Assembly: GCA_013239625.1 (NCBI GenBank)
Contig: MU055753.1
Coordinates: forward strand, 2,658,702-2,722,701
Length of the DNA stretch: 64,000 bases
Source of the DNA: Lama guanicoe
Lineage: Eukaryota
Direction of reading: 5' to 3'
Shown here in pieces: positions 40,441-55,960 of this stretch (the stretch's first letter is position 1; each line of letters begins with the position of its first letter). A program made the translations under genes and the position numbers. The notes under the pieces were generated by a model that was not told the origin of the DNA, searched no databases, and saw nothing but the letters and a program-made list of their open reading frames with translations.

Positions 40441-42467
40441 ATGGCAGGCCACCGACACCCAGTGTCCGTGAGCGGGGCAGCTCTGGTGCAGACAGAGAAG
40501 CTCCAGGTAGGAACCAACGGGGATCCCTGACGGCCCCAAGAGGGAGGGAGGGAGTTCCTGGCTTAGTCCCTCCATGGTGTCCCCCACCCTTTCATCCCAC
40601 AGACATTCGCCTTCTCTGTGAACTGGTCGGATGACAGTGACACCTTTGCACGCAGAAGCTGGGATCAGTTCAGAAAACTCCATGTGAGTGAGCCTGGAGC
40701 GACCCCAACTTCCCCCAACTGCATGACCCAGCAATGACCGCCCCTCTCAAGTGCCTGCCCTTGGGTCCTCCAGCCCCTAAGATCCTGGCAAGGGACCCCC
40801 ACCCTCCCAGGGGAACCCAGTGGGCCCTCAGAGACTGAGATGCCCATTCTCACCCTCAGAAGACCCTCAAGGAGACCTTCCCAGTGGAGGCGGGCCTGCT
40901 GCAGAGATCAGACCGCATTCTCCCCAAACTTCCTGGTCAGCCAGCAGGGGTCCCAGGAGGGGTGGGAGTGGCCGCGGTCTGATGTGGGGAGCCCTAGGGC
41001 AAGGTCCCAGTCTGTCCCTATCTTGCCCACAGATGCATCCTTGTTGGCACACTGGGGGCGCACGGGCCGCGGCCTGGTGCGCCTGCGGCTGCTGGAAACC
41101 TATTTGAGGGCGCTGCTGGTTGCGGGGGAGCGTGTGTCCCGCAGCCCGGTGCTCACTGGCTTCTTCGCGCCACAACCTCTGGACCTGGAGCCTGTGCTGC
41201 CACCGGGCAGGTGCCTGACCCACCCCCAACTCCCTGCCGGCAGAAACATTTGGAAGATGGGGAGGTGGGGTGGATTAAGGGCCTGTTAGGAGGGAAGGCC
41301 TGGAGGCTGGGTGGACTCCTGAGGGATGGCAGGCCAACCCCCAATCTTCCCACTCAATCACCTCTCATCTGCACCCTTGGCCCTTACCAGCCTGGTGATA
41401 CTGCCTGCCCGGGAAGAGCCCCTACCAGGCCCCAGGGGCAGCCCTGCCAGCTGCAGTCTGGGGGCTCCGAGTCTGCGCTGCCTGCAGCCCTTCAGCACCC
41501 AGGATGCGTGGGGCCAGCCCTTCCAGGCTCGGGCCCAGGAGGCCCTTAACGTGCTGCTGCGACACCCCTCAGGTGGGGCTGGGCAGGAGTCTGGGGACTC
41601 GCCCTTCTGCCCCCTTGGATCCCAAGGGGCCTCAGGATCTGAACCTCTACCCACCTCTTGGGCACAGGCTGGTGGCTGGTGGCGAACGAGGACCAGCAGA
41701 TGGCATGGTTTCCTGCTCCCTACCTGGAGGAGGTGGCCCCGGGCCAGGGACGAGATGGGGGACGGTCCCTAGTGAGCAGTGGTACGAGACTAACCCTCCT
41801 CCCCACACCCAGCACCACTACTGGGCAGTGTACATCACGGGTGGACCACAGGGAGCACTCAAGCCAGGGGATGACTAGGTGGCGAGAGTAGCCCTGTAGT
41901 GTGACTAGTCCCTCTAGTGAGCCACCACCCCAGGGGGTTTTACAGTGGTCCCTGGTGTCTGCAGAGATCCAAATGGGGAGAGCCTGGAGGTGGTGATTCA
42001 GCAAATGGGGGGGGGGGACGGACAGGTGAGGCCCTGGCCTCTGTGGCCCCCATGGTGACCACAAAACATCCACTCCAGGGCCCCAGTTCTGTGCTTCCCG
42101 TGCCTTTGAGGGCAGCCAAGCTGATGAGCTGTCAGTGCCTGCAGGGGCACACGTGTGTGTGCTGGAAACATCCGACCGCGGCTAACTTCATCCTCTTCAC
42201 AGATTTGGTGGCCGCACTGGTCTTCTCCCGGCTGCAATACTGCAGCCAGACGGGCTGGGCACAATCCTTAGCGGGCCATGGCTCCACCTTGGGGCAGATG
42301 ATGGGGAGGACAGAGAGGGAGAGGCCCGAAACTTCCCCAAGTGCCCCCAGGCCAAGACCGTTCCCCCTACTGTGCCTGCCCGACCACCACTGAGTGCTAT
42401 TCAGAGCCGGTGCTGCACCATCACCCGTAGGGCACTGAGGGACCCAGAGGGTCAGGGACCTTTTTGA
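40441..42467 (+). pseudogene. NOXO1: NADPH oxidase organizer 1, disrupted/truncated. Exons: 40441-40506, 40603-40683, 40860-40935, 41033-41210, 41391-41572, 41668-41781, 42079-42185 (premature TAA at 42183-42185); stranded exon 8 at 42203-42467
   Basis: PX domain (MAGHRHPVSV...[10 protein letters not shown]...RRSWDQF), SH3A ([23 protein letters not shown]), SH3B start ([21 protein letters not shown]...LETSDRG*). The WWLCR codons and exon-7 donor are absent. Exon 8 is still an open frame ([11 protein letters not shown]...[25 protein letters not shown]). Confidence 0.85.
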
Positions 42468-42816
42468 GTGTGTGGAACCTGGTGGAGGGCTGCGCTGTGC
42501 ACCCCATAACTGGAGCGGCAGCCCAGAAGCTCCAAACTCCAGGTTTGACTGATAGCAGCCACATCAGCCCCAGGGCTGTGGGAGGAGCACTTGACCCCAA
42601 GTGGGTGAGGCCAGGAGGCTACACCCCGCCTTGTCCTGAGTAAAGAACTCCTGATGGACCCACACTGCTACAGTGTCTGTGCTGAGGGGCGGGGCCTGCT
42701 GGATCTCAGCCAGGCCAGGGGTGGGGATGGAGCTGGCTGGAGGCCAAGACCTGGGGTGAGACAAAGCTCAGACAGACACAGCGTGCCGAGATGGCAAAGT
42801 CCATCTTTCTGCATGT

Positions 42817-50213: not shown

Positions 50214-52240
50214 TTACAAGGTACCTTGGTCCTGGGCCCCCCACAACTCAGCCCCAAAGCTGCCTTCTGGGGTGGCCTCAGCCTCCTCTTGTGGGGCGCC
50301 CACAAGCAGGGCATCATCTTCCTCCAGGAAGTCTCCGAGCTGGGCCAGCTGCCGGCGGATGAGGTTGGTGGTTTGGTGCATTTTGCGCATGCGCCGCAGC
50401 AGGCACAACACCAGGGTCCGGCTGCGCTCCTGGCGCTGGCTCCAGGCCTCCCGCAGCTCACGGTAGCAGTTGTGATTCGCACGCTCGGCTGGGCCCAGTG
50501 TGGCCCCGCAGCCCAGGGGGCAGCGTTGATGGGCACCATGCTGGCAGTGCTGCTGGTGCTCGGCCAGGTCCCCGCGAGGCACCCGAGACATGCAGCCCTC
50601 GTTGGGGCAGGCCATCAGCTCAAAAGGGCATGAGTCCTGGTGCCCCTTACGATGGGCAAGTGGGCACGTCACCAGGCAGCCAGCTTCGGCGTTCTTGCAC
50701 TGTGGGTAGAGGGGAGCATTGTGTAAGCTAAACCATGTTGGGCATTGCCAGCCATAAGCTGCCCATCCCCTACAGAACGTTCCATCCTTGACATTCCACT
50801 GACCGGGAACCACTGAACTGGGAGCCTCCCAAGCTCTTTTGACACCAATGACGTGATGGAGAGGGAAACAGTAGGGCAAATGCTTGGAGGTGGGGAAAAA
50901 AATTTAGATCTCAAAGAGGATGAGGGCAAGTCCTGAGGTTTGGAGAACAGGGAGTTACACGGTTGGGTGGGTCTGGTGCATTGTATGTACACCAGGCTTC
51001 TTTTCTTTTCATCTCAGTTTCCCCATCTATTAAATTAGGGGCTGGAGAGTAGTAGTAGGCAGAGCAGACATTTCATCCTCCATAATCCCCATGTTACAGC
51101 TGAGACTCTTGGAACTCAGAAAGGCTGGGTAACTTGCCCAAAGTAACACAGCAGGTAAGTAAGTGGTAGAGATGTGACTCAAATTCAGCCAGGTATAGAG
51201 GAGAAACCCTCAGTTCTGAGGATGGGATTCTTCTCACCCTGTCTCCTGGCTCTGCACCCTCAACCCTGCAGGGAAGAAGAGTGTTGGGTGGTGGGAGTGG
51301 GTGTTTTGAGCTACCTTGACTTCCAGACGGCCAATGGTCTTCCGGAGTTTATTCACATGGACCATCTTTTTCCGTTTCACCTCTTTCCTGCAGCACGGAC
51401 AGGTCTTTTGTCTAGAAGGAGACATGAGTTGGGGTGATTGTTGGGAGTGGGGGAGGAGCAAGTGGCAGCAACATGCCTCCCCTGGGGGTCCCTCCTCTGT
51501 AGCTGGAAGAGGTATAAGAGGGCTTTATAGGGAGCTCTCAGCTCTGAGGTTGGGGCTAGGGGCTGCAGATATCACGGGGTGACTAGACTTAATATTAGTA
51601 TCCCAGGAGATTTGGCAGCTGAACCCTATGACCATCATGACCCAGTACTTGGCAGACCTTTCTTCTCTCTTCTGGGCCCCAAGAATGGCCCCCCCCAGAC
51701 CCCTGCCCTCCCAGCCTCTTGGGTGCCCAGTAGCAGCACCTGGCCAGCCACCGGAGGATGCACTTCTTGCAGAAGATGTGGCTGCATGGCAACCTCACTG
51801 GTCTCTTGAGAACCCCATGGCAGACAGAACACAGGAAGTTGCAGTCAGGAGGGCTGGCGAAGAGGTTGAGATCATACCCGCCACTCTGCAAAGGACAGGC
51901 CAGCATCAGGACCTGGATCCCATTCCCCGACTCCTCAATACCCAGAGGGGGTCCCCAGGAAGATTTGGGTGGGAGATGGGCCACATGCAAGCCCCAGGTG
52001 GAGGGTTGGTTCAGCACCCACTTTGAGGGGGCAGCTGTGACAGTCAAGACCCCCATGACTACCAATCCCCAGGTGCAGAAGCTGGCCTTGGCCTGGAGTT
52101 AGACCTGGCCTGACCCCTCTGAAAGGTTTCCTTGTCCCATTTGGGATTCTGTACCACACTGTCCAGATTATCTCAGTGAGGAATGGTGTCCAGCTCTGGG
52201 CAGGTCCCTGGAGTTAGGCACAAATTTAAGGGCTCACCAT
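50214..52240 (-). CDS. RNF151: RING finger protein 151 (testis). Exons: 52240-52238 (ATG only; a second ATG at 52243), 51885-51740, 51411-51315, 50699-50214
   Basis: [42 protein letters not shown]...CPCC (C3HC4 RING), TRAF-type zinc finger [13 protein letters not shown]; ATG|gtgagc donor; AATAAA at 50202-50197. Confidence 0.93.

Positions 52241-54089: not shown

Positions 54090-55960
<1,871 letters not shown>

What the first reader, a model, noticed from the sequence alone, without database searches (positions are those of the whole stretch)
42079..42467. NOXO1 broken by a deletion fusing exon 7 to the branch point of intron 7; predicted NMD-escaping truncated organizer
Seen in sequence: exon 7 reads ...LETSDRG then TAA (42183-42185). 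The conserved WWLCR codons and the GT donor are absent, and only ~19 nt of intron remain (ctaac branch site, pyrimidine tract, cag at 42200-42202) before an intact, open exon 8. The junction GGCT fits a microhomology between GGC-TGG and an intronic ggctaac. The remnant is too short to splice, cryptic GTs in exon 7 give introns under ~55 nt, and skipping exon 7 joins phase 1 to phase 2 (frameshift). Established: NOXO1 tandem SH3 domains bind p22phox, its C-terminal Pro-rich segment binds NOXA1, and it supports NOX1 (gut ROS) and NOX3 (otoconia; mouse Noxo1 mutants have balance defects). Inference: the stop lies in the fused last exon, so the mRNA should escape NMD and give a 267-aa PX+SH3A+half-SH3B protein, null or dominant-negative. 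This lineage would then run NOX1/NOX3 another way (e.g. via NCF1/p47phox) or have relaxed them. The other exons have no stops or frameshifts, suggesting a recent or polymorphic event, or continued selection on the short form.
Basis: partly seen in the sequence, partly recalled or inferred. Interest (0 to 1): 0.85.

Follow-up and report, generated by a model that had tools for sequence, protein, structure and literature searches.

The report
NOXO1 exon 7-8 deletion, probably misassembly
In this South American camelid assembly NOXO1 lacks the last 14 bases of exon 7 and most of intron 7, which creates a stop codon, but the alpaca reference has the same gene intact, so this is probably an assembly dropout or a young private allele rather than a gene lost by the lineage.

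Summary
NOXO1 lies on the + strand between GFER and TBL3. Exon 7 reads ...LETSDRG, then TAA at 42183-42185. The WWLCR codons and the GT donor are missing. Twenty bases that look like an intron tail (42183-42202) run straight into an open exon 8. The product would be 267 aa.

The lineage-level reading does not hold. The window is a New World camelid. The alpaca RefSeq protein XP_072798521.1 (359 aa, not flagged low quality) matches the window's exons in 325 of 326 residues compared, with exon 8 at 87/87, and it carries ...SDRGWWLCRFGGRTG... intact. Older alpaca models, all Camelus models and every other mammalian orthologue whose sequence I read are also intact there. The lesion is therefore very young or not real.

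All 14 DNA runs that hold this haplotype stop at 0.95-0.96 of the sampled words. That fits missing junction words, but a wrong G11 run length would fit too. Other unchecked notes on this genome describe similar mid-size deletions at G/C-rich stretches in other genes.

My estimate is about 0.65 assembly artefact, about 0.3 real young or private allele, and under 0.05 fixed loss.

The parts
40441..40506 (+). NOXO1 exon 1 (ATG, 22 codons, phase 0)
   Evidence: Read. The translation is 22/22 identical to alpaca P0156.
40603..40683 (+). NOXO1 exon 2 (27 codons)
   Evidence: Read. 27/27 identical to P0156.
40860..40935 (+). NOXO1 exon 3 (76 nt, ends in phase 1)
   Evidence: Read.
41033..41210 (+). 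NOXO1 exon 4 (PX domain end, ends in phase 2)
   Evidence: 57/58 identical to P0156. The only difference is A129V, GCG to GTG.
41391..41572 (+). NOXO1 exon 5 (linker and first half of SH3-A)
   Evidence: 60/60 identical to P0156.
41668..41781 (+). NOXO1 exon 6 (second half of SH3-A, ends in phase 1)
   Evidence: 37/37 identical to P0156.
42007..42017 (+). G11 homopolymer in intron 6
   Evidence: It could account for the sampled words that no run holds instead of the junction. The run seems two G shorter in the Camelus transcript, inferred from the P0163 peptide.
42079..42182 (+). NOXO1 exon 7, truncated: first half of SH3-B, lacking its last 14 nt (TGG TGG CTG TGC AG)
   Evidence: 34/34 identical to P0156 residues 234-267. 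It matches Pfam SH3_1 profile positions 5-30 of 48 only.
42183..42185 (+). In-frame TAA created at the junction
42183..42202 (+). Remnant of the 3' end of intron 7 (ctaac-like branch site, pyrimidine tract, cag), in frame with exon 8
   Evidence: Read in frame it gives LHPLHR. This resembles the intron-7 tails seen in read-through ORFs of other mammals: KLRPPHR, KPHLPHR, SPVPHR, KPRPLCR.
42203..42467 (+). NOXO1 exon 8 coding part (rest of SH3-B, linker, Pro-rich PPTVPARPP, stop TGA 42465-42467)
   Evidence: 87/87 identical to P0156 residues 273-359.

Best explanation
The window carries an orthologous, otherwise perfect NOXO1 gene of a New World camelid. About 75-80 bases are missing as assembled: the last 14 nt of exon 7 and the G-rich 5' two-thirds of the short intron 7. 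The size is inferred from other mammals, where the intron is 82-87 nt. The most likely cause is a local consensus or assembly dropout at a G-rich stretch, not a biological loss. On that reading the animal has a normal eight-exon NOXO1 encoding a 359-aa organizer (PX, tandem SH3, Pro-rich tail) like the alpaca reference. Shown here: the lesion is in the window; the intact allele exists on the same haplotype in alpaca; every other exon is undamaged. Inferred: that the missing block is an artefact rather than a private allele.
For: (1) The alpaca RefSeq protein P0156 (XP_072798521.1, 359 aa, on a 47.36-Mb contig, no LOW QUALITY flag) equals the window's exons in 325/326 residues compared. That includes all 87 of exon 8 with its distinctive D305, A313, N315, V325 and single-R haplotype, yet the protein has SDRGWWLCRFGGRTG intact.
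(2) Two earlier alpaca models (P0159, P0161) and all Camelus models (P0041, P0154, P0157, P0036) are intact. So is a Camelus transcript contig with intron 7 spliced (P0163).
(3) There is no second lesion anywhere in the gene.
(4) None of the 14 DNA runs from 5 organism labels and at least 7 studies holds more than 0.96 of the 105 sampled words of 41600-42600; 13 sit at exactly 0.96. That is 4 missing words. About 3 words are expected to span a junction absent from all runs (my arithmetic).
(5) In other mammals intron 7 is 82-87 nt and its 5' part is rich in G runs, giving read-through peptides rich in G, R, W and A. Such stretches are typical sites of consensus dropouts.
(6) Unchecked notes on the same genome list several like lesions: NDOR1 exons 12 and 13 fused by a deletion; a BHLHE23 deletion of about 150 nt in GC-rich DNA; a deletion of about 38 codons at a G-run cluster; ABCA7 missing about 5 nt beside a C15 run; an exon fused to the next through the acceptor tract.
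(7) NOXO1 is kept in 160 of 164 mammals, even in those that lost NOX1 and NOXA1, and mouse Noxo1 loss gives balance defects (PMC10458973).
Against: No read-level check was possible, so the artefact is inferred and not shown. The four missing words could equally come from a wrong length of the G11 run at 42007-42017 or from one private SNP; in that case the junction could be present in all 14 runs. The window's base-level accuracy across the gene is otherwise perfect, which does not look like a sloppy consensus. A clean deletion at a possible (G)GCT microhomology is also what a real microhomology-mediated or slippage deletion looks like. The notes on other lesions in this genome are unchecked AI notes.
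Confidence: 0.65

Rival explanations
1. A real but very young deletion allele, either private to the sequenced animal or segregating in llama, alpaca, guanaco or vicuña. It would have arisen on the same haplotype as the alpaca reference allele by slippage or microhomology-mediated end joining across the G-rich intron 7. Its mRNA would end in a fused terminal exon and escape nonsense-mediated decay. The 267-aa product (PX, SH3-A, half of SH3-B) could not clamp p22phox with a tandem SH3 or recruit NOXA1 through the Pro-rich tail, so it would be a null allele. Homozygotes would be expected to have otoconial and balance defects and low colonic NOX1 activity.
For: The sequence is clean on both sides of the junction, and the rest of the gene is error-free. 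The junction could sit in a short GGCT/GCT repeat: other mammals' intron tails read ...GCN AAR CTN..., close to the window's GGC TAA CTT. Individual genomes do carry some exon-hitting deletions. Alpaca NOXO1 is clearly polymorphic: two RefSeq haplotypes differ at Q/R181, four exon-8 residues and one codon indel. The 0.96 word share can be explained by the G11 run instead.
Against: The intact allele exists on the identical haplotype. No run exceeds 0.96, so this reading needs a second window-specific difference. NOXO1 is strongly retained across mammals and its loss is harmful in mice. Similar lesions are reported in other genes of this assembly, among them NDOR1, which I believe (from memory, not checked here) to be essential; that points to a technical cause.
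Confidence: 0.3
2. A fixed, lineage-wide inactivation of NOXO1 in New World camelids or in one of their species, with NOX1/NOX3 organized by p47phox or relaxed.
For: Only the lesion itself. There is precedent for NOXO1 absence in three Eulipotyphla species and the platypus.
Against: Three successive alpaca annotations have the exon 7 end intact, one of them on the window's own haplotype. There is no second lesion and no excess change in the 87 codons downstream of the stop. The window's 1-kb stretch is nearly word-for-word identical to runs under five organism labels, so any deletion is far younger than the species.
Confidence: 0.03

Closest known systems
Alpaca NOXO1 (RefSeq XP_072798521.1, isoform X2, 359 aa) and Camelus NOXO1 (XP_031303576.2, XP_006174114.1)
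   Same: Same gene in the same gene neighbourhood (GFER / NOXO1 / TBL3). 325/326 residues compared are identical to the alpaca model, and identity to Camelus is about 96%.
   Different: The window lacks the codons WWLC and the AG of the split Arg codon, the donor and most of intron 7. It has A129V.
Mouse Noxo1 'head slant' (hslt) loss-of-function
   Same: If the lesion is real, the window's allele would also be a NOXO1 loss of function. It would be expected to disable NOX3-dependent otoconia formation (PMC10458973).
   Different: The mouse allele is a proven germline mutation with a phenotype. Here neither the allele nor any phenotype is shown.
Lineage losses of NOXO1 in Sorex, Talpa, Condylura and platypus (PMC10458973)
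   Same: NOXO1 would be non-functional.
   Different: Those are absences shared by related species, and in the three Eulipotyphla NOXA1 is lost too. Here the closest relative has an intact gene and there is no other decay.
False gene losses caused by assembly dropouts in G/C-rich sequence
   Same: A single clean lesion in an otherwise perfect gene, located at a G-rich short intron in a 62-64% GC region, contradicted by another assembly of the same group. Like lesions are noted elsewhere in this genome.
   Different: Not demonstrated with reads here.

Membership tests
NOXO1 (p47phox-related organizer, p41phox) | Orthology: best match to annotated NOXO1 proteins, in the conserved position between GFER and TBL3 | tested here: met
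   Exon 8 finds NOXO1 proteins only. Camelid NOXO1 is the top local match. Erv1/Alr (GFER) lies upstream and Utp13 plus WD40 (TBL3) downstream, both on the minus strand.
NOXO1 (p47phox-related organizer, p41phox) | N-terminal PX domain | tested here: met
   Pfam PX at residues 29-121 of alpaca P0156. The window's exons 1, 2 and 4 are identical to it except A129V. Exon 3 was read only and not re-searched.
NOXO1 (p47phox-related organizer, p41phox) | Complete tandem SH3 domains (needed together to bind the p22phox PPPRP motif; PMC12730246) | tested here: not met
   As assembled, SH3-B stops at Pfam SH3_1 profile position 30 of 48, just before the conserved WW. It is met in the alpaca reference allele.
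NOXO1 (p47phox-related organizer, p41phox) | C-terminal Pro-rich motif (human PTVPTRPSP) that binds NOXA1 and the protein's own SH3 domains | tested here: inconclusive
   PPTVPARPP is encoded intact in exon 8. As assembled it lies downstream of the TAA, so it would not be translated.
Unitary pseudogene / lineage-specific gene loss | Inactivating lesion shared by related species or independent assemblies | tested here: not met
   Alpaca models from three annotations and all Camelus models are intact at the site.
Unitary pseudogene / lineage-specific gene loss | Further lesions or relaxed constraint in the rest of the gene | tested here: not met
   No other stop, frameshift or splice-site loss. 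Exon 8 is 87/87 identical to the intact allele. dN/dS was not computable because no relative's DNA was available.
Unitary pseudogene / lineage-specific gene loss | Lesion supported by raw reads | not testable with these tools

The most novel reading that the evidence does not exclude
A young, naturally occurring NOXO1-truncating deletion allele segregates in South American camelids. It arose on the reference-type haplotype across the G-rich intron 7. It would give an mRNA that escapes nonsense-mediated decay and a 267-aa PX+SH3-A protein. Homozygotes would be a large-animal counterpart of the mouse head-slant (otoconia-less) mutant, with reduced gut NOX1 activity.
Probability: 0.3. Interest if true: 0.4.

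Novelty: not a real feature. Interest (0 to 1): 0.12.

Why it matters
A fixed loss would have made camelids only the third mammalian group known to lack NOXO1. It would also have raised the question of how NOX3-dependent otoconia form without it. The evidence shows that this is not the case, because the nearest relative has the gene intact on the same haplotype. The practical lesson is about method. A single clean exon-intron deletion at a G-rich short intron in this assembly should not be scored as a gene loss without reads. If the deletion does prove real, it is a candidate recessive null allele of veterinary interest (balance disorders), not an evolutionary adaptation.

Tried and rejected
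- **Reads.** Exon 3 was left out of later searches and scripts.
- **Relatives' DNA.** The exact deletion boundaries, the GGCT microhomology and dN/dS therefore remain untested.
- **Metagenome scan.** A scan for the exon-7 end, allowing both the Lamini and the Camelus base, gave 0 hits. A protein-based scan would mostly return other hosts, possibly human contigs.
- **Junction-spanning ORF.** A protein search with the 158-aa out-of-frame ORF that spans the junction found only a Camelus transcript ORF (P0163) with the normal spliced junction. It found no Lamini contig of either allele.
- **Spliced model.** The joined model (267 aa or 359 aa) was never built or searched.
- **Cryptic rescue.** The GTs at 42153-42160 give introns of 44-50 nt. 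The GT at 42135 gives 68 nt but joins phase 0 to phase 2. Skipping exon 7 joins phase 1 to phase 2. All of these shift the frame. Read-through of the TAA would stay in frame but would replace WWLC with xLHPLH, destroying the SH3-B core.
- **N run.** I first thought the N run at 55093-55244 might mark a gappy short-read assembly. It lies inside an RPS2 exon, so it is a mask and not a gap.
- **Literature.** No paper reports NOXO1 loss or a pseudogene in camelids.

Full report
**What is in the sequence**

The stretch is the 3' end of NOXO1 on the + strand. I placed all eight exons from the raw sequence:
- exon 1: 40441-40506
- exon 2: 40603-40683
- exon 3: 40860-40935
- exon 4: 41033-41210
- exon 5: 41391-41572
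- exon 6: 41668-41781
- exon 7: from 42079
- exon 8: from 42203, with TGA at 42465-42467

Read in frame from 42081, exon 7 gives [34 protein letters not shown]. Then comes TAA at 42183-42185, then LHPLHR, then exon 8 (FGGRTGLLP...GQGPF). The codons for WWLC, the AG of the split Arg codon and the GT donor are absent. Only 20 bases lie between GGC and exon 8: taacttcatcctcttcacag. The coding length up to the stop is 801 nt, or 267 codons.

**Gene identity and surroundings**

The exon-8 peptide finds only NOXO1 proteins. An Erv1/Alr exon (GFER) lies upstream on the minus strand. A Utp13 domain plus WD40 repeats (TBL3) lie downstream, followed by a TRAF-type zinc-finger ORF. From memory, this is the usual mammalian order around NOXO1. 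The region is 62-64% GC.

**Which animal**

Local tblastn of all fetched NOXO1 proteins against 41000-42600 puts Camelus first, at about 96% identity over the exons. The 90% cluster of the Camelus protein also contains alpaca RefSeq models.

The newest alpaca model is P0156 (XP_072798521.1, isoform X2, 359 aa, on a 47.36-Mb contig). It is identical to the window in 325 of the 326 residues I compared, covering exons 1, 2 and 4-8. The only difference is A129V. Exon 8 is identical in all 87 residues, including a distinctive haplotype (D305, A313, N315, V325, one Arg fewer near the end). An older alpaca model (P0159) and Camelus do not have that haplotype.

The window is therefore a New World camelid carrying the same NOXO1 haplotype as the current alpaca reference, but it is not that reference sequence.

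**The key result**

P0156 reads ...[21 protein letters not shown]... and carries no LOW QUALITY flag. Flagged models in the same tables do show that label. Its length of 359 aa equals the window's coding length plus exactly the 14 missing exon bases.

The following are all intact at this site:
- the older alpaca models P0159 and P0161;
- all Camelus models;
- a Camelus transcript contig whose ORF P0163 crosses the normally spliced exon 7/8 junction;
- every other mammalian orthologue whose sequence I read, apart from two representatives that look like mis-spliced models (P0013, P0023).

The intact allele therefore exists in the closest relative on the very haplotype seen in the window. A lineage-wide loss is refuted.

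**What is missing**

No camelid intron 7 DNA could be fetched. Several database ORFs of other mammals read through intron 7 (P0003, P0004, P0006, P0007, P0008, P0011, P0015, P0016, P0022). They show three things:
- The intron is 82-87 nt, counted from P0006 and P0007.
- The read-through peptides of its 5' part are rich in G, R, W and A, which implies G-run-rich DNA.
- Its 3' tail translates as ...KLRPPHR, KPHLPHR, SPVPHR, KPRPLCR. This is close to the window's LHPLHR.

The missing block is about 75-80 nt: 14 exon bases plus the G-rich part of the intron. A short (G)GCT repeat at the two ends is plausible from these tails but remains unverified.

**Consequences if real**

The stop would lie in a fused terminal exon downstream of the last exon junction, so nonsense-mediated decay should not apply (established rule; inference here).

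Pfam places SH3-B at residues 241-282 of P0156. The window's exon 7 covers only profile positions 5-30 of 48. Both SH3 domains are needed to bind the p22phox PPPRP motif, and the Pro-rich tail binds NOXA1 (PMC12730246). The 267-aa product would therefore be a null.

No cryptic donor restores the frame:
- GTs at 42153-42160 give introns of 44-50 nt.
- The GT at 42135 gives 68 nt but the wrong phase.
- Skipping exon 7 shifts the frame.

**Real or artefact**

Several indirect points favour an artefact:
- **Word share.** Fourteen DNA runs under five organism labels and at least seven studies hold the 1-kb stretch, but none exceeds 0.96 of 105 sampled words, and 13 sit at exactly 0.96. Four missing words is about what a junction absent from all runs would cost: 26-29 words span the junction at a sampling rate near 0.11, so about 3 are expected. 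A wrong length of the G11 run at 42007-42017, or one private SNP, would cost about the same, so this is only weak support.
- **Single lesion.** The gene has no other lesion, and exon 8 is unchanged downstream of the stop.
- **Sequence context.** The missing block is just the kind of G-rich stretch where consensus dropouts occur.
- **Like lesions elsewhere.** Unchecked notes on this same genome describe NDOR1 exons 12 and 13 fused by a deletion; a BHLHE23 deletion of about 150 nt in GC-rich DNA; a deletion of about 38 codons at a G-run cluster; ABCA7 lacking about 5 nt beside a C15 run; and another exon fused to the next through the acceptor tract. These are leads, not evidence. A run of such lesions, one of them in NDOR1, which I believe (from memory, not checked here) to be essential, points to a technical cause.
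- **Conservation.** NOXO1 is present in 160 of 164 mammals surveyed. It is kept even in Afrotheria, which lost NOX1 and NOXA1, probably because NOX3 and otoconia need it. Noxo1-deficient mice have balance defects (PMC10458973).

Several points count against an artefact:
- The consensus is otherwise perfect across the gene.
- A clean deletion at a possible microhomology is also what a real deletion looks like.
- Alpaca NOXO1 is visibly polymorphic.

**Verdict**

The evolutionary interpretation is not supported. My estimates are about 0.65 for a local assembly dropout, about 0.3 for a real but very young allele (private or segregating), and about 0.03 for a fixed loss in some Lamini taxon. Interest is low unless reads show the junction.

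Noticed in passing
window 55093-55244: The only N run in the window (152 N) starts inside an RPS2 coding exon (...AFVAIGDYN then N). It looks like deliberate masking of conserved sequence, not an assembly gap. The window otherwise has no gaps.
   Followed up: partly
P0156 vs P0159/P0161 (alpaca RefSeq NOXO1), corresponding to window 42203-42464 and 41391-41572: Two alpaca NOXO1 haplotypes differ at R/Q181, four exon-8 residues (D/G305, A/V313, N/D315, V/L325) and a one-codon Arg indel near the C-terminus. That is unusually many amino-acid differences within one species. It may reflect Lama/Vicugna introgression or weak constraint on the linker.
   Followed up: partly
window 42007-42017: A G11 run in intron 6. 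The Camelus transcript ORF P0163 implies a run about two G shorter and a neighbouring substitution. It is a likely site of length polymorphism or consensus error.
   Followed up: no
P0144 and P0163 (one 5788-nt Logan contig, Camelus type): A camel NOXO1 transcript contig retains intron 6 but has intron 7 spliced out. Its 266-aa ORF ends inside intron 6, close in length, by coincidence, to the 267-aa product predicted here.
   Followed up: partly
window 41209-41211 region, exon 4 codon 129: GTG (Val) where alpaca (both haplotypes) and Camelus have Ala. This would be a CpG transition if their codon is GCG, and it shows that the window is not the alpaca reference sequence.
   Followed up: partly
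   Followed up: no
window 50217-50879 (minus strand): A long open exon with a TRAF-type zinc finger downstream of TBL3, where RNF151 lies in human as far as I recall.
   Followed up: partly
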